Part shown: positions 19,815-61,479 of the stretch, piece after piece
Numbering within the stretch: the first letter of the stretch is position 1
How the letters are laid out: every line of letters starts with the position of its first letter
Source: Antechinus flavipes
Lineage: Eukaryota
Length of the DNA stretch: 64,000 nucleotides
Reading direction: 5' to 3'
Assembly: GCF_016432865.1 (NCBI RefSeq)
Contig: NC_067404.1
Span: 33,852,001-33,916,000, forward strand
Position numbers and translations under genes: made by a program
Notes under the pieces: model-generated
The model's database searches: none
What the model saw: the letters and a program-made list of their open reading frames with translations, nothing else
What the model was told of the DNA's origin: nothing

Positions 19815-20744
19815 ACCTTTCCCACTTTCCTGCACATCTTTATTGTGGAGGTTGCAGCCTCCAAAATTCTAGCAAAGGTGAAAGCTGACTCACAGAAAAA
19901 AGGTACCCAAGATACAGCACCTTTCTTGTGTGATAACATTTAGCACCCTGAGCCACAGGAACTGGGGTAGATAGTGTTGAAATGATTGCCTCCCCTGTCT
20001 CCTTGAGCACTTCTCCAACAAGCATTCAGGGAAGGTGGGGAACAGGGAAGAGAAGCAGTTTGGACGCATCATTATTCAGTATTCCCTCGGAGAAAATGTA
20101 ATCATGAACTTATCCATTATCAGAGACTGGCTGTGGACGGGAACGGAGATGTCTGACCCTTCGGTTGAGGGGCAAATAGCTGACGAGAGTTGTAATACCC
20201 TATTGCAATCATTTCCTTATTTCAAGCCAGGGGCCAGCTAATATCTCCTCTTCTCTTTATCTTTAGGGAGTATATTTTAGATGAAGTTATCTATTCAGTC
20301 AAATTGCTCAGAGCTCCCAGTTAGTTGGAGATCTCTGCTTTAATATGCATTTATATCTATTTCTAATTAATCTCTGACCTCTTTGTTACGGATGCAAAAA
20401 TTGGTTACTGAAACAGCAGATTTTCTTATAGTGTCTGTGGATAGACACCTACTGGGAAGGAAATCAAGGGAAAGAGTCGGCCTTTTCTGGGAACTTCCTT
20501 CAGCCTTTTGGTAGGTGGGTACACTGGTGGTGTACACCTGAATCTATCTGCTTCTGAAATGATTTCTCTCTTTTATACAGATTCCTTCACATATAATCAA
20601 ATTGCTCACAAATGGCTCTGGTAATATACAGGCTCTGGTAATATACAGGCTCTGTTCACTGACTCTGCTTAATTGACTCAAGCAACAAGTGTTCTCATCT
20701 AATAAGAGCCATTACTTTAACAACTTTAGGAATCTACGTGGGAC

Positions 20745-20975
20745 AGTTAAAAGAACATTATTCCTGGAGTCACAATGTTCTGAGTTCAAATCCAACTTCA
20801 GACACTTCCTAGCTGTGTGATCCTGAACAAGTCACCTAACCCCTGTTTGCCTCAACTTTATGATCTACAAAATCTGGACAGTCATAGCATTTACCTCCCA
20901 AAGTTGTTGTGAGAATCAAATAAGATAATATTTGAAAAGCAAGTTGCGAACTTTAAGTGCTGTATAAATGATAGT
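20745..20975 (+). mobile_element. MIR-type SINE with (GAT)n tail
   Basis: ctgagttcaaatcc...cagacacttcctagctgtgtga...gttgttgtgagaatcaaataagataata. Confidence 0.85.
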
Positions 20976-22399
20976 GATGATGATGATGATGATGATATGA
21001 GGGGGATAATAAACAGAAGCTCACCCTCACACTTTTTTTTATTCTCATTTCTTTCAGTAAATGTTCCTAGGCTCATTAATTCAAACTATAAGAGTCCTTA
21101 AAGGTCTTCACATTCAAGTCCCTCATATTAAAGATGAGCTAAGTGAGATATAGAAGGGGCCTTAAATGACTTACCTAGGTTCTCACAACAGAGAACCTTT
21201 TGAGGTAGAATTCAAACCTAGGTTTTCCTGACTCCATGAGCAGAGCTCTTCACAGTGACTTACAATACACTTGCAATTCAATAGTTCTATTATAATCGGG
21301 GCACATTGTGGTTAAGCATGATCACTATAGATCTGATTGTAGAGATTTCCTAAAAGTTTTGGGTGGAGGAAAGTGAATGGATCAATCAATCCGGGCACAA
21401 TCTGTTCCCATGTGCCTGGAACATGCTCACTATTCTACTCCAAATACTAATCTCCCTGACTTCCAACTAAAATCCCACCTCTTATGGGAAGCCTTTCCCA
21501 TCCTCTTCAAGTCCAGTGCTTTCTCTCTGGTAATTTATTTCCTATTTACCCTTTCTAGAACTTCCTTTTATAAATGAACCAAGTGAATTCATTGAGGAAA
21601 TGAATCAATTTCATGAAATATTATGGAACTCTTTTTACATTTTAAATCCTAGGTGGGACTGAGAGGAACTTGGGCCAGGATGGCGAATGGGTGGGTGAAA
21701 CAATTATGAAAAATTCACATGAGTTCTTATACACACAGAGCCCATCCTCAATCTACCAAACTTCTGTGTGTGGAAGGGCCATCCCTTGGAACACTCCTCC
21801 TGCTGCTTACATGGGTTATATTATGCCTTGTATAACATCAGAATATGCAAGAAGAAACAAGTTCAACAAAAAAAGAGAAAGGGAAGTTCTGAAGAAATGA
21901 ATGTGAATATAAAGGGAACTCCCCGATCAATCATGATTCTAAAAGGGCCCATACAAAAGATGGAAGAAAGGGCAGGACAAATCTGTCCAAAACATGGCAT
22001 AATCCTATAACAATAATATCCGGAGTGCAAGTGTTCAGAATGAGCTGAGGAAATGAAATCACAATAGAAAGCCTTTGTATAATTATTACCCATGATGTGG
22101 GAACTCTAATTTTGGGTAGATGGAATGATAATGACTAACTTCAGAAATAAGGCAGAGCTTCTCAATTTGCATTTTGCTTTTGTTTTCTCTGCCAAGGAGA
22201 ATGATCTCTAGATTGGAAAAGAAAAAAAAATGACAAAAGTGGCTATTAGGAAATTAATACCCAAGGAGATAAGTGAATGTCTAGGGGCCCTTGATGAGCA
22301 TCGGTTCCCCTCTGGTGCCTTGGACACTGAAATAATTGTTGTATTTGATGATTAAGTCATAGTGATTTTTGAAAGACTGTGAATGGATACAACAGGTAC

Positions 22400-33224: not shown

Positions 33225-33368
33225 AGATCCAGACATGGAACACAACTTCTAGAAAGTTATAGACCCAGACATGGAACACAACTCCTAGAAAGTTATAGAC
33301 CCAGACGTGGAACACGACTCCTAGAAAGTTATAGACCCAGACATGGAACCCAACTTCTAGAAAGTTAT
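33225..33368. repeat. 36 bp x 4 minisatellite inside an antisense MIR
   Basis: Unit agacccagacatggaacacaactcctagaaagttat, four near-identical copies. Confidence 0.95.
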
Positions 33369-34469
33369 AAAATCAAGACTTGAATTTAGATCTGCTGATT
33401 CTAAGTTTGCAGTAAGTAACTCCTGCAAAACTGAGTCTATTGCTCCCCTCCCAGTCCTCAGATATGCACATGTGATTTCATTTCTCCCTCCAATGGTGGC
33501 AATAACAAGCCATCCATATCTGCCCAGCCTAAGCAAAGTTGTTCTGTGACAGTTTTCAGAGAGGGCTTCCTCAGGACATCACCAGGATATATCAATGGGA
33601 CCCAGGAGCTGTCCAGCAGTCACACCTCACATTTTGTTTACATATTTTTATTTTTTACCTCCCCTTCACTATTTCTTATGTGTTGCCTCCTCCTCGAGCC
33701 TGCAGGAAGCACTTGCAAAACAAGCATTGAAGTGATTTGAGTGACCTGAACTATCTTTTCTTAATAGGAAGTGAGGAGAGTGGGGGGAGTGGTTGGGATG
33801 TGGAGAGAACTGTTTTTTTTTTCCCCAAAAAACATTAGCAGAGCAGCTAAAAGGGACTGAAAAGCCCTTGCAGAGAGGAAGAGTGATTTGTCCAAGATTG
33901 TTAGCTAGGAGATACTGAGGTGTATGGAAAGTATTGAGTTGGAATCAGAGGGTTTCACATTGGTTTTATCACTCACTGACATCAGAAAAATCACCACTTC
34001 TCTGAGAATCAATTTTTCTAGCCATAAAAATCAGACAGATTACATGTTCTCTCATATCTTTACTAACTCTAAAATCATATGGTCCTATGAGTAGTTGCCA
34101 TTAGGTTATAGTCCTCTCTTCTAGAGTACCTCTTACTAAGTGACTCTAACCTTTTCCTCGCTAAATGACAGAATCACAGGATTTGGGAATTAGAATGAGC
34201 CTCGGCTAACCATCTAGTCCAACCCATCTGTGGAAAGGAATCCACAAATCTTCAGTCTGCTGGAAGACTTTCAAGGAAGAGGAACCCAGAACCGTTGGAG
34301 TCAGCCAACTAGGCTTAGGGACAACTCTAGATGTTAGGAAGTTTGGGGACATCAAGCCTAAATGGGCTTATTTGCAACCTCTCCCCATTATTCCTGGTTC
34401 CTTCCTTTAAGACCAAACTAAAGAAACTAAACTCTTAGAAAAAAAGTTCTTTCTACTTATTGTCTTCAC

Positions 34470-37205: not shown

Positions 37206-37734
37206 CTGACCCAAGTTTAAAATCAGCCTCTGACATGGTCTAACTGTGTGACCCCGGGCAAGTCACCTCACTTCTGCCTGCCTCAGTTTATTACTCTGTA
37301 AAAAAAAAGCGAGTACTAACCACATCTATTTCCAAAAGTTCTTATGAGGATTAAATGAGGGAATACTTATAAAGTGTTTTGCAAAACTTAAATCACATAT
37401 AAATGCTACCTACCTATTGTTCTGGTTCTTTTTATTATCAAAGATCGTGATGTATTCTCTCCCACATCTCTTAATACCCCACAGAGGTAGCCCTGTGGGA
37501 AAGGATCTGGGAATACAATTACCTCCTTTTCTTATTTTTAGCCAGTAAATTGGGCTCTTATAGATAATTAGATGTTTAGAAGGTCAAACACCACTGACAA
37601 AACAAATGCTTTTCCTGGAGACACAGAAAGCAGAAGAGACTTTATAAAGACTTAACAGAATATGAACTTTTACAAAATTTCTAGCTCAATTTTCAATCAA
37701 ATCTGTAAATCCATTTTTAAGAAATGGCAAATCT

Positions 37735-43869: not shown

Positions 43870-44530
43870 GTCACGAGGCAAGACCTTCCATATAAAAGGA
43901 CCCAGACAGACAGCTCCCTCTGCGGTTTGCCTCACCTTAGTCCTGGCTACCCTGCCCCTGGGCAATGATAACCTTCCCAAACTCAGTACCCAGCAGTGAC
44001 TCCTCACGCCTTCTCCAACTCGGTGATTCTTATCTCCCCTTGCCATTGCCTGTCCTCCACCTCCACGTTCACTCCCTGAGTCCTGTGCCTTTTAAGCCAA
44101 CTCTCTCTCCTACAACATCCCACTTGAGATCTACCCAGCCCTTCCACCGTGCACTCTGGAGCGCTTGCTCCATAGGTAACAAGCTGGCTTTTATCCAAAA
44201 CCTTTTCCTTTCTCATTAACTCCATCTTCCCCAATTCCCCAAGACCTGACTTGGAGAAAGAGTACCCAGGTCAGGACCACAGGTTTGAACCTCAGAGTCA
44301 CATCTTGTTTTAGAACCGGCAATACCAAGAGGCAGCTAAGTGGCACTGCAGTGGGCCTGAAGTCAAGAAGATCTGGGTTCAAATCCAGTTTCATATACTT
44401 ACTAGTTGCATGACCCTGGTAAAGTCACTTAACCTCTGCCTCAAATTCCTTATCTGTAAAATGGGCATAATAATAGTACCTACCTCCCATGCTTGTTGTG
44501 AGCACCAAATAAGATATTTGTAAAGTGAAG
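43870..44530 (+). mobile_element. L2 ORF2 start (endonuclease) followed by a MIR
   Basis: PFHRALWSACSIGNKLAFIQNLFLSH, matching the L2 PFHCALWN..S..NKL pattern. Confidence 0.75.
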
Positions 44531-44849
44531 CACGCGGGACAATGATTGGAAACAATGGTCAAGAAATAATCGTTTCCTTTCTTTCTGCCCACCACTGGTG
44601 CCCATGACCCTGACTATTCTCTCGGGGCCTCACTTTAGCTACTGCTCCATCTCTGGTAAAGGAATCACTTCTTGCTCTACTGTGTGGTACCCAGTGCCTA
44701 CAGCTGGTACTCAACAATGCTGCCCAATATTCCGACACCATGCTGTCTCTTTGGGACAATGCTAGTGGCTGCTCTTCCTTACTACCCCAAGTAGAGAAGT
44801 GTCAATAGTTGGGTTTTTTTTTTTTCCTGGACTGTGTCCATAATCATCT

Positions 44850-45600: not shown

Positions 45601-46217
45601 CATGATAACAACCTGGTTGTTATTTAGCTGCCCCTTTTAACAAGATAAGGGATGTAGAGGATGCCTTATGCTTTGGTAGCTTTATACTTGGGTTGTGTTT
45701 ATCCTTCATTTCAAAGAGGCCCAATGACGCTCATGCTAGATGTCAAGGTACATGTAGAGTTTTCCCAGCATGCCCATAAACTGGACATCAACCTCCTTAT
45801 CGGTACTATGTTTCAAAAGGTTTCATCTCGCTACTTCCCACAAGTATTTTGTTTCTGTGTTCTTTAGAAAAGTTCTTTATCTGATTTTTTTTTATCATTC
45901 CAACCCTCCCTCTTCCTTCCTACCTCAAACCTGTTCTTCTTCACCATGATCCCGAGACTCTTCACCCCTCACTTATTACTCAGGTCATCTCCCCTGCACT
46001 GGTGAATTTCTTCTTGAAATTCTTGGTGAATCAGTTTAGCTTTTCCCTGCCCTTTCCTTTTTTGTTCCTTGGCCTTATCTTATTCCCATCTTGCCAAGCC
46101 TTACCTTCGGGTCACTCCTAATGTTTGTTCCTATTAAACAAAGCGGGAGGGAATCATAAAATTGTGTAGCTGGGTCCATTATAAATGGCTGTTTCAGAGT
46201 CTCCACAGGGTCCTTAC

Positions 46218-46350
46218 TGGAGGTTTCATCCTCTGTACTAGTGAAATTTTAGGGGAGGCTGCCCTGCCTTTTGAGGGGGCAGAGAGACTAGTACGAGAAC
46301 GTCCAAACTTGGAGAGACTGACTACGGTGTCAGAGAGACTGACGACACAT
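46218..46350 (-). CDS. Candidate exon (phase 2-0), CVVSLSDTVVSLSKFGRSRTSLSAPSKGRAASPKISLVQRMKPP
   Basis: 133 bp, donor CCA|gtaagg, single open frame, CpGs retained, phase-compatible with the 48341-48405 exon. The acceptor (gaacacag) is weak. Confidence 0.3.
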
Positions 46351-48340
46351 CTGTGTTCATTTCACTAAGCCACAAAATCAGACCCATACAGCAATGCAAA
46401 TTATGGTGCCTAAGACAGGTGGTGTTTACCGAGTCTCTATGGACTACCCAGGTAAAATAACAGCTGCTATTCATTTGCTTATCAGAACAACATTGGGATA
46501 TAGACACTATTGCCATCCCCACTGTACAGATGAGAAAACTAAGGCTCACGTGGGTCAAGTGACATGCTCAAAGTCATACAACAATGATAATTTTGAAAAA
46601 AAAAAACAAGAAAAAAAATGACAATAATAGTAACAATGATGATATCTGGTAATCATTTAATATTTTTAAGGTTAGTAAAGTACTCCATAAATATCATTTC
46701 TTTTATCCTCACAACAATTCCATAACGTAAGTGATGCAATTATCTCCATTTTTACATATGAAGAAACCGAGGTAAGTAAAAGTAAACTGGAATGAGATGA
46801 CGTGACTTACCCAAGGTCATACATCTAGGAGGAAAAGCAGCAGGAATGCTAGCAACAGCAGCAGTTGTTGGATGCCCACATCAAGGAAAGAGCGATGCTC
46901 TATGAACAAAGCAGAACTGAAGTAACTCAGTATGTGCGACAGGACTAGAAGTAATGATATTAACAACATTATTATTAATTAAAAATTAAAAAAATAATCA
47001 ATTAAAAATATTAAAAATAAAAACAATTGATTTCTAAAAAATAATTAATTAATTAACACTGTCATAGCTAGCATTCATATAGTGTTTTAATTTTTCTAAA
47101 GTACTTTATTATAAAGTGGTGTGCCATTTTATCCTCATAACAACCTTGGAAAATAAGTAACATTTTTATCCTCACTTTGCAGATGAAGAAATTGAGGTAG
47201 ACAGAGGTTAAATGACTTGCTCAGGGTCATGCAGCTGATAATAAGAATGAGGAATGACAATAGCTAGAATTCATATGGCACTTTGTGGTTTACAAAGAAC
47301 TTTGCAAACTATGTCTCATTTTATCCTTATGACAACTCTGGGAGGTCGGTGCTATCATTATCTTACTTTACAGATAAGGAAACTGAGGCAGATAAAAGTG
47401 AAGCTACTTGACCAGGATCAAATGCCAAATTGCAGTGATATCAATAAGAACAATAACGATAATAATTTTAAAAGTCATCAATAATTCCAGTAATAGTAAG
47501 CACTAGTGCCTTAATATTTATAAAGCACTTTAAAAATATTATCTCATTTTTGTCTGGTAACAACTCTGGAAAGTAGGGGCTATTATTGTCTCCACTTTAT
47601 AGATGTGAAAACAAATGCAGATCAAGGTGAATTGACTTGTCAAGCATCACACAGCTAATAATAATAATAATGATATTAACAACAACAATAGTGATGATAA
47701 TAATAATAGTCAACATTTCTCTAGTTTTCTAGAGAAAACTGTGTTTCAATATCAAATTGCTTTATAAGTATGATTTCATTTCATACTTAGAACAATTCTG
47801 AAAGTTAGGTCCTATTAGTATCCCTACTTTAGAGATGAGAAAACTGAGGCGCACTCAGGTCAAACAATTGCCCAAGGTCACATAGCAAACTACAATTTTA
47901 CTGTAAATGATCATAATAAAAATAATAGCAATACCAACCACAAAAAATAATGAATGGAATAATAATGATAAACAGTGGCCAGAATTTCCATAGCACTTTA
48001 AGTTTTCCAAAGAGCTTTACAAATACGATTTCCTTTTACTCTCATAACAGTATTGGGAGTTTGCTGATGATATTACCTTATTTTACAGATAAAGAAACTG
48101 AGGTAGGGGTCAAGCGACTTGTCCACAGCTATTATCCTTTTCTCTGAAGAACTTTGGAATTGTGTGGTATGGGAGACCCTGGCACAGCTCTGCCCAGCGT
48201 ACCTCACCCTTATCAGAAAAGGAGCAAACACAATGGAAGTAGCTCAAACGAAATGCAAAACGAGCTAAGTTAGAGAATCTGCCCCAAACGTCCACATGGA
48301 CAGTTTGTACCCAACCTGCAGCAAAGCGTTCTGAGCTTAC

Positions 48341-48405
48341 ATTAGTCTGATCAGCCCCTCAAACACATTGAAATTTGACTCCAACACGATGATGTCATTT
48401 TTGGC
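48341..48405 (-). CDS. Candidate exon (phase 0-2), AKNDIIVLESNFNVFEGLIRL, unidentified gene
   Basis: Acceptor gtgctgttctttctcaaaag, donor AT|gtaagc, 65 bp, the other two frames closed; sits in a unique CpG-containing island inside the array. Confidence 0.5.
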
Positions 48406-50589
48406 CTTTTGAGAAAGAACAGCACCAAGCCACCCACCAGGGTCCCATAGTTATTAGAAGAAGGAACAGGAATGATGATGCAGAGGAAGAGGATATTAAC
48501 AAGAACAACAGCAGCTTCAACAAAAACAACGTTAACAATCATAGTCCCTGTTCCTGTAGGGCTTGAAGGTTTACGAAGTTCTTTTTGAACATTATTTCAG
48601 ATGTTTCTCAGAATGATTCTTGGAAATGGGGCTCTTAATTATGCCCCAATGGACATATGGCAATTCGGAAGGAGAGATCAAGTACTTAGCCTAGTGTCAC
48701 AGAGGTAACCATAGTTGTAAAAAAAAAAAAAATTAGCAATACTAATTGTAAAAGAGATAGTGATATTAATCAAAATGGTAATAGCAATGTCGTAATAATG
48801 AATAATTTGGCATTCAGAGACTCTTTGAGTTTGCAAATTGTTTTACCAGTTTCCCAAACTCATTTTATACTCAGAACAATCCTGGGATGGAAGAGTTATT
48901 AGTATGTCCATTTTAAATGTGAGAAAACTGAAGCAGAACTAAATCAAGGGACTTTGCCAGAGTAACACAGTAACACATTACTAATGGTAGTGAATGATAG
49001 AAACAACAACAGCAGCAACAAAATAACAGTAATCATAATAATGGCTAACATTTATGTATTACTTGTATTTACAAAGCAATTTACAAATAACTAATTTTAT
49101 CTTCATAAAACCCCTGGGAGGTGGTTGCTTTTATTTTCACAACTTTATAAATGAAGAAAATGAGACAGAAAGTGGTCAAGTGACTTGCCCAGAGTCACAC
49201 AGCAAATAATAATATCAATAATTTTATTTTTATTATTAGCAACTAATATTATAGTCATGATATCCAGCATTTATTGAGTATTACAAATATGAAAAGCACT
49301 TTATACATATTTTCTCAATGTATCCTCAGAACAAGCTTGGAATGTAGGTGACATGATTATTCCTATTTAAAGAAGACAAAAATGAGGGGCCCATAGATAA
49401 GATAACATAACAAATTAGAATAATAATGATAAGAATTAAAACAAAACAGTAAGCATAAAAAAATTGTATTGTTGTTTAGATAACAGTATTTAGCATCACA
49501 TAGCACTTTAATGATTACTGAGAGCTTCATAGATATTTATTTCATTTTGTTTCACAACAACCCCAAAAGGCAAGAGCTTGTCTCCACTTTACAGATGTGA
49601 AAACTAATGGACACAGAGGAGAATCAACTTGTCCAGGGTCACACAGCCAGTAATAACAACATTAATGATAGGGTTTTTTTTTAAATCTACATTTTTACAG
49701 CGTTACAAGGTTTACAAATTGCTTTACAAATAGGGTTTCATATGATACTCAGAACAAACCTGGAACAGAGTTTTCTATTAGTATTCCCACTTTACAAATG
49801 AGAAAACTGAAGCTGGTAAAGCAGTAAAACTACTTGCCTAGGCTGACCCAGCATACCAGAGCAATAGCAACAAGAAAAAAATTTTTTTTAAAATAATGAA
49901 TGGAATAATGATAACGATCATGGAATTTATAAAGCACTTTAAGCATCTACAATGTTTTACAAGTATTATTTCATTTTATTGTCACAGCAACCCTAAAAGT
50001 TTGGGGGTATTGTTATCCTCATTTTATAGATAAGAAGGATGAGGTAGAAGTCAAGTGATTTATCCATGGACACACAGTAATTAGTAAGAAAAATAGTGTC
50101 AGTAATGAAGGTAATAATAATGTTGATAATTACAGTCAATATTCATGCAGTGCTTTCAAGTTTTCAAAGTTCTTTATAAAAATAATTCCATATGATTCTC
50201 AAAATGATTTTTAGAGCTAGGTGTTTTGATTATTCCCACTTTCCTTAGGCAGAGTTTAAATGACTTGCGGTCCCAAACACAGTTGTAATTATAATAGTAA
50301 TAACAATGATAAAATAATCCAAATGATAACGTTAATACTGAATAATTCATAGTTAAGAATAATAGCAAATAGTTAACAATTAACAAAGGTAATATAACAA
50401 CAATAGGAACAGTAGAAAAGTATAGGAATAACTTAGATTCGCCAAGAACTTCAAAGTTTGAGAAGTCCTTTATAAATGTTAACTCATTTACTCTTAGAAC
50501 AACATGAGATGAAGATCATAATAGTCTCTCCATTTTGCAGTTGAGAAGTATAAGGCGGAAATAGATGTTCACTCAGAATGATCCAGCTA

Positions 50590-51240
50590 CTTTTTGCAGT
50601 AATAGAAATGACAATCATAATAGTCAAGGTAATAGGATAATAATGATAACAACACTGATAGCCATGGTGATAGAAAGACTAACAGTCACCAAAAGACCAA
50701 TGACATAGTAATAATAGCAGTAAAACTAGTAGGAATAGTGACCGGAATCATAAGAGCAACAGGAAAAGCAAAAGGAACATTAACAACTGTAAAAGCAACA
50801 ATATTAGTAACGGCAACAGCAAATAACAAAATAGCAATAGTCAAAGTGACAGGAAAAATGACAACATCCGTAAGAGCAAAAGTCATAACAATAATACCAA
50901 AAGCAACAGTAAGAACAACAATCAAAGCAAAAGAAAGAACAACAGTAAAGGCAAGAACAAGAACAAAAGTAACAGCAACCGTAACAGCAACAACATGACC
51001 AAAAGTAAAAGCAATAATAAAAGTAACAAAAATAAAGGTAATTGCAACAGTAACATTAACAACAGGAACAGCAAGAGCAAAAGTAACAGCAACAGTAAAA
51101 AAAAGTAATAGTGAAAGCATCAAAATAGTAAAAATAACAACAGTAATAGAAACAATAATAGTAACAACAAAATGAAGAGCAAAAGTCAGTATAACAAAAA
51201 CAATAGTAATAGTAAACACAATAATACCATTATTTTATTT
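50590..51240. repeat. Period-3 cryptic repeat (ACA/GCA/GTA/ATA/AAA)n, tract 1
   Basis: Almost every third base is A. Confidence 0.9.
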
Positions 51241-51255
51241 TATTATATTATAAAT

Positions 51256-51326
51256 ACATATAAATATAAATATAAATATAAATATAAATATAAATATAAA
51301 TATAAATATAAATATAAATATAAAAT
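51256..51326. repeat. (TATAAA)n, about 11-12 perfect copies
   Basis: Direct inspection. Confidence 0.95.
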
Positions 51327-52053
51327 AAAGTATTTTATTTTTATCCTCCCAATAACACTGGGAGTTTGCTGATGTTATTATCCCCACTTTAAAAATAAGG
51401 AAACTAAAACAATAGTCAGTTCATTTGGCTAGTTCACATAGATATTCATAAGAATAATAGTAATGATCATAATGAAAATGAATCTACTAATAATAATTGT
51501 CAGTATTCGCAAAAACTGATACAGTTTACAAAGTTTTTTAAAATGCTGTTTTATGTGATTCTCAGAACAACTCTTGAAAGTATATCCTTTGGATATCTCC
51601 ATTTTACATATAACAGACTTGAAGAAGAAATCAAGTATCTTGCCCAGGGTCATATAACTAGTTGAAAGTATAATAGTAATAGCAGTGGTTATTAATGGTT
51701 ATAATCTAATTAGTAAAAATAATAGCAATAGAAATAAAAATAGGAATAGAATTGATAAAGAAATTTTAAAATAATTGCTATTCATGGGGAAATTTGATAT
51801 TTTTGAAGTGCTTTACAAATATTATCCTATTGTCCTCTTAGAACCACTTCAGAATGTAACAGCTAACAGTATCCTCACTTTACAAATGAAAAGAAAATGT
51901 GGTAATATTTATTAAGGATTCTAGAAACATCAAAACAACCAACCATGGAAGTTTGTTGATTCAATTACTCCCATTTTACAGATAATGAAACAAAGGCAGA
52001 GATCAAGTGACTGGTCCACGATCACAAAAGTATTGATAGGTGTAACAGTGGAA

Positions 52054-52100
<47 letters not shown>
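52054..52100. repeat. (GAT)n microsatellite in an array linker
   Basis: Direct inspection. Confidence 0.95.
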
Positions 52101-52760
52101 AAAATAATTATAATACGAAGAAATAGTCATTTTTCATGAAGGATTTTAAGATTTACAGATGTCTTTCCAAATATATCATTTCAGCCTCAGCAGGTGGGTG
52201 CTCTGATTATCTCCACTTTACATGACAAAACTGAAATAGATGTCAAAGCACTTGTTCAGGATCACATAGCTAATTATGGTAGCAAAAGTGAGATAATGGT
52301 AGTAGTAAAGGTAATGTTAATATAATAGCAATCCCAATCCCAATCCCAGTTAAAGAGGAACAGGAATAGGAACAGGAAGATGAATAGCTGGCATTCATAA
52401 AATACTCTAAACCACTTTAAAATCTTATCTACTTTCATTCTCAGAACAACCCCAAAATATAATTGCTATTACTATCCCTACTTTCTATATGAGAAAACAG
52501 GGGTAAAAATAAGTCCAGTGACTTGAACAGCATCACAAAGCTTGTTACAAAGCAATGATTATTAGCAAATTAGCAAAACGTTGTTAATAGCATGAATAAT
52601 AGCAATATTAACAACTGAAATAAGAATCATGGACTTCCATAGATGTTTACAAAATGTTTTATTTCATTTTATTCTTAGAACAACCTTGGGATATAGGTGC
52701 TATTAATATCCCCACTTTACACATGAGAAAACTGAGTTAGATATAGTTGACCCTGGGCAA

Positions 52761-53288
52761 TGCTTCAGATTTGTCACATCTGAAATGAAAATAATCCAAG
52801 AATTGTTCTGAAAATCACATGAAATAATATCTTAAAATCTTTGTAAATCTTATGAATTATTAATAAATCTTCATGAATGTTGACTATTGTTATCATCATT
52901 ATCACTATGATCATTATTACTATTCTTATAAATAACCATGTGAACCTAGGCATGTCACTTGACACATTGCTTCAATTTCCTTATCTTTGAAGCACGGATA
53001 ATAATATCACCAAATTCCCAGGGTTGTCATGATGATAAAATGAAACAATTTTTTGTAAAGTACTTTAGAATGCTCAAAATGCTGTATGCTAAAACTGAAC
53101 ATTAGTATTCCCTTCACTAGTTTATTATTATTCTTAATATTATTTAATATTAATTATTATTTTTTAATATTATTATTCTTAACATTGTTTTATTATGATT
53201 TCTAGAATCATTGTGTTTTTCCATGTGATTTTGTCACTTATTCTATATCTCCTTCAGTTTTCTCATTTGTCAAGTGGAGACACTAAAA
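52761..53288 (+). repeat. Inverted copy of 55915-56397
   Basis: Colinear reverse-complement match; these are the only array monomers in the opposite orientation. Confidence 0.93.
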
Positions 53289-55775
53289 TATCAGCAACAA
53301 CAAGATCAAAAGTTAAGAGCAACAATAAAAACCACAAAAAAGTAATAGGAACAACAACAAAAGTAACAACAATGGGAAGAGCAAAAATAACAGTAACAGC
53401 AATAGCAAAAACAACAACAAAAGTAACAATAGTGAAAGAAACAGCAATAACAAAATAACACTAACTGAAATAGTAAAAGTAACTGGAACAGCAAGAACAA
53501 AAGTGACATTAATAGTAACAGCACAAAAGCAAATATAACTAATAATAATAGCAACAGCAAAAACAAAAGTAACAGGAGCAGCAACAATAACAGTAATATC
53601 ATATAGTAATGACAACCAAAGTAAAAGCAACAGAAAAAAATAGCAGTAATATTACAGCAAATTCAAAAGCAACAGTAAATCTATAACAGCAAAAACAAAA
53701 GAGCAATAGCAACAGTAAGAGAAAAAGCAAAAACAAAAAGAACAGCAACAATAACAATAAGATAATAACAACAATAGTAACAATAAGTAATAGCAACAGT
53801 AAAAACAACAAAAAAGTATCAGTAACAAGAGCAAAATAGAAACACCAACAGTAATAGTAAAAATAATAACAATGGCAAGAACAAAAGTAACTATAAAGCA
53901 ACAATTACAAAAACAACTAAAATAATAGTAACAATAGCAACAGAAAAAGTAATAATTACAGAAACAACAAAAGTCATAGTAATAGCAAAAGCAACAGTTA
54001 CAAAAAGAAGAATTATAGGAATAATAACAGCAGCAACAATAATAACATAAACAACAAAAGGAACAGTAATAGGAACCACAATAGCAAGAGCAGAAGCAGA
54101 ATTATAACAGCAACAGTAAAAGCAACATTAACAACAAAACTAAAAGTAACATCAACAGTGAGAGTAAAAACAACAAATGTAACAATAACAACAAGAAAAA
54201 TAATAGCAACAGTAAGAGTAAAAGTAAGGGCAACAGTAAGCAGAAGTAACAATAACAATAAAAGTAATAATATTAGCAAAAGCAATAGTAGCAGTAAAAT
54301 CAACAGCAACAATAACTGTAACAAAAATAACTGCAATAGTAACATTAAGAATAAGAACTGGCAAGAGCAGAAGTAACAATAACAATAACAGTTACAAAAA
54401 GAGCAACAACAATAATAATTATGACAGTAATGGTAGACAGCAACAGTAACAATAATAGCAACAGCAAAAGAAAGAGTAACAACTATAGCAACAACAAAAA
54501 TAATAGTAACAGCAAGAGGAGAAACAAAAGTAATAGTAATAGTAAAACAACAGTTACAGAAATATTAACAGTTATAGTATTAATAACAGTAACATAAACA
54601 ACAAAAGAACAGCAATAATAATAGTAACAACAACAGAAAGAGTAAAAGCAGCAGTAAAAGGAATATCAACAACAAAGTGACAGTAACAGCAAATGTAATG
54701 CTAACATTAACAACAACAAGAACAGGAACAGTAATGGTAAAAGTAGCAGCAATAGCAACAGTAAAAGTAACTTTGACAGGAACAGTTACAACCATGATAA
54801 CAGTGAAAGTAATAGTACAGCAACATTAAGAGTAACTTCAGTGGCACCTGTAAAGGTAATAATAACAGTAATTGCAACATGAACAAAAACAATAGGAACA
54901 ACAACAACAGAAATAACATTAGTAATAACAGTAGACAACACAGTAATAATAACAAGCAAAGGCAAGAATTATAGTAGCAACAACGACAGGTAAAGGAACA
55001 GCTATAGAAAAAAAAGAGCAACAGTTACTATGACAATAGGAACAGCAATAACAAAAGCAACTGAAATAGTAACAGTAATGACAAAATTAACAGTAACAAC
55101 AATGGTAACAGCAATAGGAACAGCAACAATAAGAATAACAGCAATAACAAAAGTAATGATATGAACAATAGCAAGAATAAAAGTAAATGCTATAACAACA
55201 ACAGTAACAGTAATAGTAACAGTAACAGGAATAGTTACCACAACAGTATTAGTAACAGTAACATCAACAGCAAAAGTAACATTAATAGTAATAGTATAGT
55301 AACAATCACAGCAACAGTAGTAGTAGAAGCACCAACAACAAGAGAAAATATAAATGCAGCAGCAGAAACAAGAAAAATAACAGCAACAGCATCAACAACA
55401 GTGATAATAGCAATAGTAATAGCAACCATAACAGTAACAACAAAAGGAAGAGGAAAAATCAGTGTGACAGTAACAAAAACAGTAACAGCAATAATGCCAC
55501 AAAAGCAATAGTAACAACAAAAGGAACAATGATAGTAACAGAATAGCAAAAGCAAAAGTAATAGCAGTATTAACTACAAAAACAACAGTAACAGCAACAA
55601 GAATAATAATTGTATCAGTAATAGCAACAATAACAGCAGAAGCAAAATCAAATGTAATAGCAACAACAAAAGCAATACTAACAACAGCAATAACACAATG
55701 ATAACACCAACAACAGCACAACAGTAACAGCAAAGAGTAAAGGAAATGCAACAGCACCAGTAATAGTAACAGTTT
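53289..55775. repeat. Period-3 cryptic repeat, tract 2 (~2.5 kb)
   Basis: Strongly A-rich on the plus strand; gtaaca/gcaaca/gtaata/gcaaaa hexamers. Confidence 0.92.
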
Positions 55776-58700
55776 ACATTCATAGAATATTCTGAGATAT
55801 GAGAAGTAATGAACACAGATGTTTTCATCATAATATAATAGCAATGTCAATAGTTGTTTTTATGGTATTGATTATCTCCTTTTATTCTCAAAACAATTTT
55901 GAGATAGAGTTGCTTTTTAGTGTCTCCACTTGACAAATGAGAAACCTGAAGGAGATACAGAATAAGTGACAAAATCACATGGAAAAAATACAATGATTCT
56001 AGAAATCATAATAAAAATATTAAGAATAATAATAAACTAGTGAAGGGAATACTAATGGCCAGTATTAGTATACAGCATTGTGAGTATTCTAAAGTACTTT
56101 ACCAAAAAAATGTTTCATTTTATCATCATGACAACCCTGGAAATTTGGTGATATTATTATCCATGTTTCAAAGATAAGGAAATTGAGGTAATGTGTCAAG
56201 TGACATACCTAGGTTCACATGGTTATTTATAAGAATAATAGTAATGATCATAGTGATAATGATGACAACAATAGTCAACATTCATGAAGATTTATTCATA
56301 ATTCATAAGATTTACAAAGTTTTAAAAATATCATTTCATGTGATTTTCAGAACAATTCTTGGATTACTTTCATTTCACATGTGACAAATCTAAAGCAGAA
56401 ATCAAGTAACTTGCCCAGGGTCACACAACTAGTTGAAAATGTAATAGTAATAATTATGATGACAGTAATGGTTATAGAAGTAATAATTGTATTATTAATA
56501 ATAAGAGAAATAGAAATAATATGATTGATGAAGGAAGAGGAAAAGGAATAGTTGCCACTCATGGTGCAATTTCATATTTTAAACATATTTTACATATATT
56601 ATTTCATTGTATTCTCAGAATAAGCCCAGGTTGTAGCTTCTAAGAGAATTGTCACTTTACAAATGAAAAAAAAAATAAGATAATATTTGTAAAGGACTCT
56701 GGGAACATCAAAACAACCAACCATGAAAATTTGTTGAAACTAAAAATAGGTATAATAATAGAGATGATGATGATGATACTGATTTTAATAAAGATGATAA
56801 AATATTTATAATAAGAAATAGTCAATATTCATGAAGGATATTAAAGTTTACAGATGTCTTTACACATATCATTTCATCTTCAGAATGATATTTGCACATA
56901 GGGTCTCCATTTTACACATGACAAAACTGAAGCAGATGTCAAGGGACTTGTTCAGAATTACGCAGCTAGTTGTTGTACTAAAAATGAGAGCAATGATAAT
57001 CGTAATAGTGAAGGTAACGGTAATAGCAATAGCAATATAAGGAACAAGAATAGGAACAGGAAGATGAATGATTGGCAGTCATAGCAGGCTCTAAGATTTG
57101 TAGAAATACTTTTAAAATATTACCTAATTTAATTCCTTGAACAACCCTCAAATATAACTGCTGTTTTAGGCTTTCCACTTTCCAGATAAGAAAATTGAGG
57201 TAGATATAGGTAAGTGACTTGAGCAGTTTAGTAGTAATAGTAATAGTAAGGGTAACATCAGTAGTATTTGCAACAATAATAGAAATACTATTAGCAATAG
57301 CAATAGTAAAGATAATAGTGATAGTTGTGTTTGTAGAATCTTCTGAAGTTCATAAAGTACTTTACAAATACAATCTCATTTCATTCTCAGAATAATTCTG
57401 GGGTTTGGGTACTATTAGTATCTATACTTTACAAGTTAAGCAACTTGCTCAAGATCTCTCAGCAAGTTACATTGATACCTTGAACTGATGTTAATAATAA
57501 AAGCACCAATAATAAATATAATTAATAGAATCATGATGATAATAACGGTCAGCATTCGTAGAGAGTTTTGCCTTTCAAAGTGGTTTAGAAATAGTGCTTC
57601 ATTTTGCCTCCGCTCTACAATCTTGGGAATTTGGTAGTGTTATTATCTGCAGTTTACATATAAGAAAACTGAGGATAAGGACAAGTGACTTGGCCAGAGT
57701 CACACAGCACTTAGTAGGAGCAATAGCAGATTATAGTAAGAAAAATAGCCACAACTCATGTAAGGTTTTCAGGCTTGCAAAGATCTTTACAAATATAATT
57801 TTATTTGATTTCCAAAATGATCCAAGGAAGTAAGTTCTCTGATTAAGCTCAATTTCCATATGATGAGCCTCAGGTAAGGTCAAATGTCTTGCCCTGGATC
57901 ACATAGCTAGAGTTAGTAATGGTAATGGTGATTGGTAATAATAATAGATACAATGATAATAATAATAGTAATTATATTAATAGTAGTAACAATAGTTATA
58001 TTTGGTATACAGAGCACTTTGAGATTTGGGAAGTCCTTTACACATTTTTCTTTTCACAACTTTTTCACGAGCTCCTTTTCTTTTCACAACTCTAGTAAAG
58101 ATGCAATTGCAAATTGATATTTAGCAAATGCTAAATATGCAAATGCTAAAGAAGAGAAAATCAATACAGACACAAGTCAAATGACTTGCCCAGGGTCACA
58201 TTGCAAGTGACAAAGAAGTTGAAAGTGATAAAAGTAAAAACTACAACAAAGATAAAAAAAATAACTAGAATAATAATTCTAATAATGTCCAGAACTCATA
58301 TTGTGCTTCATATTTTCCAAAATGTTTTTCAAATATTATTTCATTTTCTCCTCACAAGAACCCTGGAAATTTAGGGATTTTATTATCCCCACTTTTCAGA
58401 TAATGAAACTGAGGCATCAAGCAAGTGCCTGTTCTAGGGCCACATAGCTTAGTGGGAGTGATTATAGTTATGATGATGAAGATAATAATAAAGAGTCAAC
58501 AATGATGTATTACTTTAAGGTTTCAAAGCAGCTTTGAAAATATTATCTCACTTGAACCTCAGAACAACCTGGGGTCTAGGTGCCATTTTTTTATCCTCTT
58601 TTTACAGATGCAAAAGCTAAGGCAAACCTAGGTCAAATGATTTTATCAGAGTCACATAGTACATTATTATTATTATATAATGTTAATTGTTCAGAAAATA

Positions 58701-58784
58701 ATAATCACTGGAAGAACAAGAACAGCAAAAACAACAAGCACCTCTACCATTATAACACCTAGGATTCGTACAGTACTTTCATAT

Positions 58785-59016
58785 TTCAATTGTTTTCAGT
58801 CATGTCTGACTCTTCATGACTTTTCTTTGCAGAAATACTGCCATTTCCTTCACCAGTTCATTTAAAAAGAGGAAACTGAGATAAAAAGGGGAAAGTGATT
58901 TGTCCAGGGTCACATGGCTAATAAGTGTCTGAGGCTGGCTTTGAACTTAGGAAGATAAGTCCTTCTGACTTCAGGTGCAGCACTACATCCGCTGCAGCAC
59001 CATTTAGCTGCTTTTG
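58785..59016 (-). mobile_element. Full MAR1-type SINE inserted into an array monomer
   Basis: Has head and RTE-like tail; TSD ctttcatat at 58776-58784 and 59017-59025. Confidence 0.85.
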
Positions 59017-60464
59017 CTTTCATATACATCAGATTCTTTACAAATCTCTTATTTCTTGATCATAACAACTCAGGAAAGCACATGCTATTATTATTCCTAA
59101 TTTATAGATGTCGAAACTGGATTGACTTGCACAGTCACACAGCTAGCAATAATAACAATGATATTAATAATAACAATTATAATCACAATGACGTTTGTCA
59201 GCTTTGATGAGATGTGATGTTTTTCAAAAGGCTTTACAGATATTATTTCATTTGGTTTTCAGAATAATTCAGACGGCTAGATGCCATTATTGGGCTAATA
59301 ACTCTTTTCAAATGTGTAAATTGAGGGAGACTGAAGTCAAATGACATGCTTAGAATCACACTGCAAGTCATAACAATAACGACAATGACAACAACAACAA
59401 CAACTATACCTGGAATTCACATTCTGCTTTTTGGTTTGCAAAGGGCTTTATAAACATCATTTCCACAATCCTTAGAATTCATGCAGCTATTGTTCATACT
59501 TTACAAATAAGGAAATTGAGCTAAGGGTCAAATGACTTACCCAGGGTCATATAGCAAGTAACAATTAGAATAATTATGATCATACCACCAATAACAACCA
59601 CAACCACAATAGCAACAATAATAGCAATCAACATTCAATTAGGGCTCTGAGATTTGCAAAGCATTTTCTAAATGTTATCTCATTTTATCCTCAGAAGAAT
59701 CTCAAGAGGTAAATGCTTTTATTATTCCCACTTTACAAATGAGAAGACTGAGGGAGACAGATCAAACAAGTTGCCTGGAGTCACACAAGTAATAATAATG
59801 ATTTCAGTAACAATGATGATTCTAATCAGCATTTCTAGAGCATTGTTAGCCTTTCAAAGCACTTTACAAATATTTGGTCCTCAGAACTATCCTGGGTGGT
59901 AAATGCTGTTAGTATCCCTATTTGACAGAAAACTGAGGTAGACATATGTCCAACGACTTGTACAGGGTCACACAGCAAGTTACAATGACAATAAAAAGCA
60001 GCAATACAAATAATGATCATAGTAATAATGAGGATGATCATAGTCAGCACTTATATAATGCTTTAAGGGTTCCAAAGTGCATTATAAAAACTACTTCATT
60101 TAATCCTCATAGCAACCCTGATAAATTGGGGGTGTTATTGTCTCCACTTTAGAGACAAGGAAACTGAGACAGAGGTCAAGTGATTTATCAGGATCCCACA
60201 GCTAGTATTAGTAATAGTAATAACAATAATAATGAGTGATAGTAATAATACTATTAGTAGTAATAATAGCTGACAGTTATATAAGACTTTAATTTTTGCC
60301 ATGTGCTTTCCAAATATCTCATTTTATCCTCAGCATAAGCTAGGGAAGTAGGTAGCTTTAGAAACTCTATTTTACAAATTAAAAAAAAAAAAAAGACCTG
60401 AGGCAGTCATAAGTCAAATGGCCTACCCAGAGTGACATGGTAAATGCTATTGATAATGATAACG

Positions 60465-60690
60465 GTGGAGCAACTAGAGGGCACCAGGCTTGAAAGTCAG
60501 GAAAAATCATCTTCCTGTGTTCAAATCTGGCCTCCGAAACATATCAGCCTGGGCAAGTCACTTAATTGTTTGCTTCAGTTTCCTGGTCTGTAAAATGGCC
60601 GACAGCATCTCTGCCAAGAAAATCCCAAATGGGATTCCCATTTCAACTCACGGAGTTGAATATGACTGAAATGACTGAACAACAACAACA
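60465..60690 (+). mobile_element. MAR1-type SINE inserted in an array linker
   Basis: ggagcaactagagggcaccagg head...tatgactgaaatgactgaacaacaac tail. Confidence 0.8.
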
Positions 60691-61479
60691 ATAACAATAA
60701 TAGTATTTTTCTAGTGCTTTACATTAATAAAGAATTTTATGAATATTATCTCACTTGATCCTCATGACAACCTTAGGAGGGAGCCATAGCACTTATAATC
60801 CCCATTTTAGAGATGAGGAAACTGAGACAGAGAGAAGTCCCTGACTCCAGACCCAGTGCTTGGTCCAGAGCAGTTGATTCCCATTTTAGAGATGAGGAAA
60901 CTGAGATAGAGAGAGGTCCCTGACTCCAGGCCCAGGAGTATCACCTAGCCGTACTGCAGGGAGATATCTGCCAGGGGCGACCAGCACGGACTCCAGGGGG
61001 TTGGTGGACTGGCTTTCTTATGCCCTAGAGCCCAAGAAAAAGACATCCATGCTTCCAGCCTTTTCCCTCTAGATTATTCAAGTCTAAGGAACATTTTTGA
61101 AATATAACATTGTATTATTCTTCCCATTCCACGTTAAAACTTTTCCCCCTGAGGGCCATGTTGATGCCTTTTAGGAAAAATTAAAAACAGCTTGCCAGGT
61201 ACTCTAATAGAAATTCCCAATGTACCTAATGTGCGTGATGTACTTACAGGGGAGACAGGAACAACAAGCATTTATTATACATCTGCTCCACGCAGGTCGC
61301 TGTTCTGGGCATCGCAGAAGACACAGAACATGGGCTAAAACCTTGTCTGCTTCCTTGGTTAGAAGGCAGAAAATAAACAAAATTCAAATGGATCTTGGAT
61401 CTCATTATGTGATTGCAAGGTTCCCCCAGCTTCACCACAGGAGGTCCCCCCATCATACTAGAAGTCTTCGTTTCTCCCT

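What the first reader, a model, noticed from the sequence alone, without database searches (positions are those of the whole stretch)
46460..60940. ~14 kb satellite built from decapitated MIR SINEs
Seen: about 45 monomers, each the CORE plus 3' tail of a MIR with no tRNA-derived head. They are cut at about the same point (..cacagcta), almost all in one orientation, and joined by AAT/AAC/AGT/GAT triplet linkers. Independent retrotransposition would not give identical truncation and orientation, so one ancestral unit was tandemly amplified, plausibly through microhomology between the (ATT)n tail and the TTACTAGC start of CORE. Monomers are heavily diverged, so the array is old and has persisted without homogenisation. 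I know of no described MIR-derived array of this size. It could be neutral, or act as a chromatin or RNA scaffold.
Basis: partly seen in the sequence, partly recalled or inferred. Interest (0 to 1): 0.8.

Follow-up and report, generated by a model that had tools for sequence, protein, structure and literature searches.

The report
Old tandem array of headless MIR SINEs
A 14.5-kb stretch of a marsupial (dasyurid) genome is a real, very old tandem array of about 43 copies of one MIR SINE that lost its tRNA-like front end; it grew by repeated copying of blocks of several units, as satellite DNA does, and is most likely neutral DNA.

Summary
A profile built from the window finds 45 same-strand MIR bodies in 46470-60960. 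These are 43 array units after merging, plus 3 units in one inverted duplicate. The rest of the window has 20 mixed-strand fragments. Only 2 of 40 copies in the array carry the tRNA-derived head, and both are later insertions of another SINE; outside the array 14 of 16 do (p = 2e-9). Units stop at ..CACAGC(T/A)AGTAA. They are joined by AAT/AAC/AGT-type linkers, with a median period of 231 bp.

The array grew by DNA-level duplication, not serial retroposition. A tree gives array-only monomer clades that recur in fixed order (a-b-e five times, g-d-a-b-e twice; permutation p = 1e-5). There is also a 1.2-kb direct block duplicate (71-72%) and a 0.5-kb inverted duplicate (86%). So "never homogenised" is only partly right. 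The right-hand end unit keeps part of the head, as in the SINE-derived satellites of squamate reptiles.

Units are about 62% alike, so the array is ancient. Related species share its 31-letter words. I found no sign of function.

I found no described MIR-derived array. Verdict: new member of a known kind, moderate interest.

The parts
46470..60960 (+). Whole array. It holds 43 forward head-less MIR units (antisense of MIR on the + strand), their linkers, two A-rich tracts, one inverted duplicate and later insertions.
   Evidence: nhmmer profile hits; junction listing; head test.
46470..50586 (+). Units 1-16. Units 1-4 are unresolved edge monomers. Units 5-9 and 12-16 are two copies of the five-type order g-d-a-b-e.
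   Evidence: Lag-7 diagonal of residual identity; ML clades and order string; three-unit block 5-7 versus 12-14 ranks 7th of 636 block alignments.
48133..48455 (.). 323-bp unique, GC-richer insert between unit 7 and its linker. Its origin is unknown.
   Evidence: Read; no other copy in the window.
50600..51230 (+). A-rich tract 1, an expanded linker (54.5% A, period 6). A pure (ATAAAT)12.8 repeat follows at 51254-51329.
51324..52530 (+). Block A (units 17-22, types a-b-e then a-b-e). It is the direct duplicate of 56104-57226.
   Evidence: blastn 71.0% over 659 bp and 72.1% over 491 bp; linkers 17/25, 18/26, 20/27 and 21/28 are among the five best linker pairs; sister pairs in the tree with 96-100% bootstrap.
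52761..53288 (-). Inverted duplicate of 55915-56397 (part of unit 24, unit 25, part of unit 26). It forms a palindrome around tract 2.
   Evidence: blastn 85.7% over 530 bp on the minus strand; - strand profile hits at 52748-53294; near-zero branches to units 25 and 26.
53290..55770 (+). A-rich tract 2 (55% A; self-match 0.575 at lag 6 and 0.49 at lag 3). It is an expanded linker of AACAGT/AGCAAC/AGTAAC-type hexamers and is not coding.
   Evidence: only low-complexity ORFs.
55871..60438 (+). Units 24-43. Block A' lies at 56104-57226. Units 31-33 form another a-b-e set, and units 40-42 form a third g/d/a-like block.
58775..59016 (+). Secondary insertion of a different head-bearing CORE-SINE (antisense on +) into one array unit. 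It is flanked by the 9-bp direct repeat CTTTCATAT at 58766-58774 and 59017-59025.
   Evidence: Head model hit 58895-58994; sequence read; the unit reads through once the insert is removed.
60455..60700 (+). Secondary insertion of a head-bearing CORE-SINE, sense on the + strand, between units 43 and 44.
   Evidence: Head hit 60561-60477 (-); CORE hit 60599-60542 (-); sequence.
60702..60960 (+). Right-hand terminal unit. It is a MIR body that still carries the outer part of the tRNA-derived head. It has an internal deletion of about 65 bp across the CORE/head junction and a local tandem duplication of about 80 bp.
   Evidence: Pairwise alignment to the full-length dispersed copy at 44340-44540; profile hits 60702-60840 and 60875-60924.

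Best explanation
This is a locus-specific, SINE-derived, satellite-like array.

Origin (inferred): one MIR copy sat here, antisense on the + strand, with its head towards 60960. An unequal exchange or replication slip then occurred between its (TTA)n-type 3' tail and the similar letters TTACTA at the head/CORE boundary. That produced a repeat unit of MIR body plus tail, without the head. The original head was left on the terminal unit.

Growth (shown): the array grew by out-of-register recombination or slippage in steps of several units. This gave a higher-order pattern: a-b-e trimers and a g-d-a-b-e pentamer. Later events were a 1.2-kb direct block duplication, a 0.5-kb inverted duplication, expansion of two linkers into 0.6-kb and 2.5-kb A-rich hexamer tracts, and insertion of two younger SINEs.

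Present state: amplification stopped long ago and the units have decayed to about 62% mutual identity. The array is inherited by related dasyurid species. It most likely has no sequence-specific function, because the units lack the Pol III promoter region of the SINE. No ORF, Rfam family or RNA-run record was found.
For: Enrichment and anatomy:
- The array is dense, same-strand and head-less: 45/50 hits on one strand; head on 2/40 copies versus 14/16 outside, p = 2e-9.
- All units stop at ..CACAGC(T/A)AGTAA.
- The period is regular, median 231 bp.

Shared derived states versus dispersed copies in the window:
- Column 137: C in 28/39 array units versus 1/17 dispersed copies.
- Column 103: C in 23/44 versus 1/16.

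Tree and order:
- The ML tree has supported clades made only of array units: b 99/97, g 96/84, a 80/87, e 85/79, d 81/83.
- Along the array they read e...gdabe..gdabeabe.beeeabebeeabea..g...da..
- Permutation p is 1e-5 for 'abe', 3e-5 for 'be' and 4e-4 for 'ab'.

Block duplicates:
- Direct duplicate at 71-72% identity and inverted duplicate at 85.7%.
- The linkers of the direct duplicate also match. Whole three-unit blocks rank first and seventh of 636.

Other support:
- The terminal unit keeps part of the head. Squamate SINE-derived satellites show the same 'longer terminal unit' pattern (PMC10702118).
- Independent public runs hold the right-hand 5.5 kb. Two samples of organism A hold 0.95-0.96 of its 31-mers. 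Five other organism labels hold 0.71 down to 0.17.
Against: - A single founder is not demonstrated. The base of the tree is a polytomy in which three dispersed MIRs sit among the edge units, and the AU test is merely non-rejecting (p = 0.42).
- Only four dispersed MIR bodies from this genome were available as outgroups. The 'private' states could therefore belong to a MIR subfamily.
- The older a-b-e repeats are not visible in the linkers. In whole-block alignments they score only about 1 SD above background.
- The terminal head-bearing unit has ancestral states at columns 103 and 116. It could be an unrelated neighbouring MIR.
- Absence of function is argued from absence of evidence only.
Confidence: 0.7

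Rival explanations
1. Insertion hotspot by tail-homing. MIR RNAs with (TTA)n-type tails were repeatedly reverse-transcribed by the L2 machinery into the matching tail of a resident MIR. That would fix the orientation. The 5' joining would occur by microhomology at TTACTA, which would fix the cut point. Only afterwards were some blocks duplicated.
For: The units are as diverged from the consensus (74%) as the dispersed MIRs of the window (75-81%), so they date to the period of MIR activity. The base of the tree is star-like and dispersed MIRs sit among the edge units. The junction letters allow microhomology. Two other SINEs did insert into the array, so it is a permissive target.
Against: 38 of 40 copies share the same cut point within a few bases, whereas 14 of 16 dispersed copies are not cut there. 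Most units share states that are rare in dispersed copies. Clades recur in fixed order (p = 1e-5), which retroposition cannot produce. The period is regular at 231 bp. At most the first few units could have arisen this way.
Confidence: 0.12
2. One retroposition event produced a concatemer. The reverse transcriptase repeatedly jumped from the TTACTA region of the MIR template back onto a (TTA)n tail, so that several head-less units were laid down at once. DNA-level block duplication then followed.
For: This explains the uniform cut, the single orientation and the head on one terminal unit as well as the DNA-exchange model does. From general knowledge, template jumping is a known property of non-LTR reverse transcriptases.
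Against: No present-day sequence feature separates it from unequal exchange. The head sits on the unit that would be copied last by the enzyme, which is compatible but not diagnostic. The documented growth steps are at the DNA level.
Confidence: 0.08
3. Assembly artefact. The array, or its palindrome and 2.5-kb tract, was produced by mis-assembly of repetitive reads.
For: The inverted duplicate around a low-complexity tract (52761-56397) is the kind of structure that chimeric long reads can create. No read-level check was possible.
Against: The units are only about 62% alike, so each is effectively unique sequence and hard to mis-join. The inverted arms differ by 14%, so they are not a fold-back copy. 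Two samples of organism A hold 95-96% of the 31-mers of 56000-61500, and other species hold 17-71%.
Confidence: 0.03

Closest known systems
SINE-derived satellites (sSat) of squamate reptiles (Vassetzky, Kosushkin and Ryskov 2023, PMC10702118)
   Same: Both are tandem units made from part of a tRNA-related SINE. In both, a longer terminal unit keeps the SINE terminus. Alternating two- or three-unit patterns show growth in multi-unit steps. Homogeneity is low compared with classical satellites.
   Different: The source here is a mammalian MIR (CORE-SINE), and the unit is nearly the whole body plus the tail (231 bp). Only one locus is known. The array is far older and more decayed (62% identity). 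The sSat loci are many per genome and tend to be subtelomeric, which could not be tested here. The authors state that they had not met such satellites in mammalian SINEs, though they had not specifically checked.
Classical satellite DNA with higher-order repeats (for example primate alpha satellite; general knowledge)
   Same: Head-to-tail units of nucleosome-scale length; monomer types recur in fixed order; diverged, unresolved monomers lie at the array edges and the amplified blocks lie inside.
   Different: The array is 14.5 kb, not megabases. There is no ongoing homogenisation. It is AT-rich, interstitial non-coding DNA with no known centromeric role, and it has a clear transposon origin.
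Tandem transposon dimers as seeds of satellites (double-insertion model of McGurk and Barbash 2018; recalled from memory, not read here)
   Same: A transposon-derived unit becomes a substrate for unequal exchange and expands into an array.
   Different: That model starts from two insertions at one site. Here the uniform head-less cut and the terminal head point to internal duplication of one copy, although a first dimer formed by insertion is not excluded.
SINE multimers such as the Dip/B1 tandems of jerboas (as cited in PMC10702118)
   Same: Same-orientation SINEs lie head to tail.
   Different: Those are full-length SINEs with heads, in runs of up to eight and at many loci, attributed to insertion. 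Here there are 43 head-less units with a higher-order pattern.
Overgrown MIR-tail and SINE-piece minisatellites noted elsewhere in this genome by this scan (s1-193720, s1-181892, s1-204737, s1-208930; AI notes, not checked by me)
   Same: Same genome. Old SINE parts or tails have expanded in tandem, and the two A-rich tracts here are the same phenomenon.
   Different: Those units are 33-45 bp pieces or tails. Here the repeated unit is the whole MIR body.

Membership tests
MIR / CORE-SINE derived sequence | Conserved CORE domain | tested here: met
   Profile positions ~90-163 are shared with 20 dispersed CORE-SINE copies of the window.
MIR / CORE-SINE derived sequence | MIR-specific 3' body downstream of the CORE (L2-related region) and a simple-repeat tail | tested here: met
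   The units align over all 163 profile positions with the full dispersed MIRs at 20812-20970, 37244-37407 and 44409-44526 (E 1e-28 to 1e-35). The dispersed copy at 37244 has the same kind of tail. No Dfam or Repbase library was available, so the subfamily is not assigned.
MIR / CORE-SINE derived sequence | tRNA-derived head with Pol III promoter boxes (needed for a complete, mobile SINE) | tested here: not met
   The head is absent from 38 of 40 array copies and present on 14 of 16 dispersed copies. The units are SINE fragments, not SINEs.
Satellite / tandem repeat with higher-order structure | Head-to-tail units in one orientation with a regular period | tested here: met
   45/50 hits on the + strand; median period 231 bp, SD 43.
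Satellite / tandem repeat with higher-order structure | Monomer types recurring in fixed order | tested here: met
   The clade order string has 'abe' five times and 'gdabe' twice; permutation p = 1e-5.
Satellite / tandem repeat with higher-order structure | High homogeneity from concerted evolution | tested here: not met
   Mean pairwise identity is 62%. TRF does not report the 231-bp period at all.
Satellite / tandem repeat with higher-order structure | Many loci or large copy number, heterochromatic location | not testable with these tools
   No access to the rest of the genome. Notes from 633 other windows mention no similar array, which is weak evidence.
SINE-derived satellite (sSat type) | Repeat unit is a portion of a SINE that also exists as dispersed copies in the same genome | tested here: met
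SINE-derived satellite (sSat type) | Longer terminal unit reaching the SINE terminus | tested here: inconclusive
   Unit 60702-60960 aligns to the outer head of a full-length copy. However, it carries a ~65-bp internal deletion across the junction and ancestral states, so it could be an unrelated neighbour.
Cluster of independent retropositions (insertion hotspot) | Varied 5' truncation points | tested here: not met
   The end point is uniform at ..CACAGC(T/A)AGTAA.
Cluster of independent retropositions (insertion hotspot) | No positional homology between units (star phylogeny) | tested here: not met
   Supported clades in fixed order and block duplicates with matching linkers.
Cluster of independent retropositions (insertion hotspot) | Individual target-site duplications around each unit | not tested
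   The linkers are low-complexity triplet repeats in which short direct repeats arise by chance. L2-type insertions often lack such duplications (general knowledge).

The most novel reading that the evidence does not exclude
The array is not mere decay. It may be the first mammalian SINE-derived satellite retained across dasyurids, or across marsupials, because its ~43 phased MIR CORE modules and A-rich spacers act together, for example as a chromatin or enhancer scaffold or as a long non-coding RNA. Alternatively, it may record a so far undescribed tail-homing or template-jumping mode of the L2 reverse transcriptase that builds head-less SINE concatemers.
Probability: 0.08. Interest if true: 0.7.

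Novelty: new member of a known kind. Interest (0 to 1): 0.42.

Why it matters
Direct links between dispersed SINEs and tandem satellite-like arrays are few. The one systematic study (squamates, PMC10702118) leaves open whether mammals have them. This locus is a clear mammalian example, built from MIR, one of the oldest mammalian SINEs. Its units have diverged enough that each duplication step can be read as a fossil record: the seed junction, the higher-order growth, the block and inverted duplications, and the tail expansion. It gives a concrete pattern to search for in marsupial and other mammalian genomes, namely same-strand MIR bodies cut at TTACTAGC and spaced about 230 bp apart. It also gives a datable series of events for comparing dasyurid assemblies. 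There is no indication that it matters for the biology of the animal.

Tried and rejected
The Rfam scans were run on either side of them (46400-56390 and 56440-64000). Later scripts only read the local window file.
- Tandem Repeats Finder does not see the 231-bp period. It reports only the short-period linkers.
- Coding reading of the A-rich tracts is rejected. There are only low-complexity ORFs of up to 177 aa, most on the opposite strand.
- Rfam found no family anywhere in the window.
- Pfam on ten long ORFs of the flanks found nothing, so the gene context is unknown.
- The tree test for array monophyly is inconclusive (p-AU 0.42).
- A simple dimer (alternating) model is rejected. Identity at even lags is not higher than at odd lags; the signal is at lags 7-8 and in the clade order.
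- The older higher-order copies could not be confirmed from linkers.
- Literature searches for a MIR-derived satellite or tandem array found nothing relevant. Ahmed and Liang 2012 does not mention MIR.
- Earlier notes of this scan list no similar array.
Full report
**Observation**

I read 46000-62000. I then built a profile by iterated nhmmer from one clear unit (47060-47245) against the window.

- The search converged on 70 hits. 45 are on the + strand and 5 on the - strand within 46470-60924. The other 20 (9 +, 11 -) lie in the remaining ~48 kb.
- That is 3.4 versus 0.41 hits per kb. The orientation bias has binomial p = 4e-9.
- The + strand is the antisense of the SINE. Dispersed copies in the window continue past ..CACAGC into TAGTAAGTGTCTGAGG.., the antisense of the tRNA-derived head.

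**Head test**

A head model made from four such copies and iterated finds 20 heads outside the array.

- Of the copies that reach the end of the CORE, 14 of 16 outside carry a head. Inside the array only 2 of 40 do (Fisher p = 2e-9).
- Both exceptions are later insertions of a different CORE-SINE.
  - One lies at 58775-59016. It splits an array unit and is flanked by the 9-bp repeat CTTTCATAT.
  - The other lies at about 60455-60700 in the opposite orientation.
- Array units end at ..CACAGC plus (T/A)AGTAA-like letters and then run into AAT/AAC/AGT/AGC/GAT linkers.
- The median unit length is 231 bp.
- After merging two split hits there are 43 forward units, plus three in an inverted duplicate.
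- MIR body makes up about 47% of the span.
- Two linkers have grown into A-rich tracts of 0.6 and 2.5 kb (55% A, period 6 stronger than period 3).

**How the array grew**

Self-comparison shows two clear duplications.

- 51324-52530 is a direct duplicate of 56104-57226, at 71-72% identity.
- 52761-53288 is the reverse complement of 55915-56397, at 85.7% identity. It forms a palindrome around the 2.5-kb tract.
- The linkers of the direct duplicate are among the five best-scoring linker pairs of the whole array. Whole blocks were therefore copied as DNA, not single SINEs.

After removing each unit's general closeness to the consensus, the unit-by-unit identity matrix shows a further diagonal. 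Units 5-10 match units 12-17.

A maximum-likelihood tree was built from 45 array units and the four dispersed MIR bodies long enough to use. It gives supported clades made of array units only. I call them a, b, e, g and d.

- Support values are b 99/97, g 96/84, a 80/87, e 85/79 and d 81/83.
- Read along the array, the clade labels are e...gdabe..gdabeabe.beeeabebeeabea..g...da..
- The trimer a-b-e occurs five times and the pentamer g-d-a-b-e twice.
- In 100,000 shuffles of the labels, p is 1e-5 for 'abe', 3e-5 for 'be' and 4e-4 for 'ab'.
- Alignments of three-unit blocks with their linkers put 17-19 versus 25-27 first and 5-7 versus 12-14 seventh of 636.

This is a higher-order repeat. The unresolved, most individual units lie at both edges (1-4 and 35-44), as in satellite arrays. 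Serial retroposition cannot give this pattern.

**One founder or several?**

- Most units share states that are rare in the dispersed copies of the window. Column 137 is C in 28/39 units versus 1/17 dispersed copies. Column 103 is C in 23/44 versus 1/16.
- The tree base is unresolved, and the AU test neither rejects nor shows monophyly of the array (p = 0.42).
- Only four dispersed MIR bodies were available, so a subfamily origin of these states is not excluded.
- The right-hand terminal unit (60702-60960) aligns to the outer part of the head of a full-length copy. It has a ~65-bp internal deletion and a local ~80-bp duplication.
- A longer terminal unit that reaches the SINE terminus is the usual pattern of the SINE-derived satellites of squamates (PMC10702118). 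It is also what internal duplication of one resident MIR predicts.
- The seed step, exchange between the (TTA)n tail and TTACTA at the head/CORE boundary, fits the junction letters but is inferred.

**Age and inheritance**

- Units are 74% identical to their consensus and 62% to each other. This is like the dispersed MIRs of the window (75-81%).
- Earlier notes of this scan (unchecked) name the genome as the yellow-footed antechinus.
- Public runs hold the right-hand 5.5 kb. Two samples of organism A hold 0.95-0.96 of its sampled 31-mers. Organisms B to F hold 0.71, 0.67, 0.49, 0.35 and 0.17.
- If spread evenly, these shares correspond to roughly 1-6% divergence (my inference).
- By the same inference, even the youngest internal event (arms 14% apart) would predate these species splits.
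- No run on record as RNA holds the stretch.

**Function**

- The units lack the Pol III promoter part of the SINE.
- ORFs are only low-complexity.
- Pfam finds nothing in the flanks.
- GC content is about 30%.

I therefore take the array as neutral, decaying DNA. This rests on absence of evidence.

**Comparison and novelty**

- Transposon-derived satellites are a known kind. SINE-derived ones were described systematically only in squamates. Those authors say they had not met them in mammalian SINEs, though they had not specifically checked.
- Eight literature searches found no MIR-derived array.
- Notes from 633 windows of this genome list SINE-piece and MIR-tail minisatellites with 33-45-bp units, but no array of whole MIR bodies.

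I file it as a new member of a known kind: real and well structured, probably of no consequence to the animal, and of moderate interest as a readable record of how a SINE turns into a satellite-like array.

Noticed in passing
window 48133-48455: A 323-bp unique, GC-richer stretch sits between the end of unit 7 and its linker. It has no other copy in the window. Its origin is unknown; it could be filler DNA or an old insertion.
   Followed up: partly
window 58766-59025: A head-bearing CORE-SINE of another family (its body carries the TTCAGTCATGTCTGACTC-type region) inserted into an array unit, with a clean 9-bp target-site duplication CTTTCATAT. This shows the array was already there when that younger SINE was active.
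   Followed up: partly
window 56671-56714 and about 51897-51940: A ~44-bp inverted MIR fragment (profile positions 16-59, - strand) follows the truncated e-type units 27 and 19. It is a small internal inversion that was inherited through the 1.2-kb block duplication.
   Followed up: partly
window 52054-52100 and 51254-51329: Two pure young microsatellites lie inside old linkers: (ATG)15.7 at 100% and (ATAAAT)12.8 at 97%. The paralogous linker in block A' has only a short GAT run, so these expanded after the block duplication.
   Followed up: no
window 60800-60960: There is a local tandem duplication of about 80 bp (around 90% alike) in the terminal unit, covering the CORE start and the head remnant.
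   Followed up: partly
window 33225-33369: A 36-bp unit is repeated 4.0 times at 92% identity (TRF score 248). It is unrelated to the array.
   Followed up: no
window 20743-21251: Two head-bearing CORE-SINEs lie tail to tail in opposite orientation around a (TGA)9 run at 20975-21000.
   Followed up: no
KIF4A is X-linked in therians (general knowledge), so the window may lie on the X chromosome. This was not checked.
   Followed up: no
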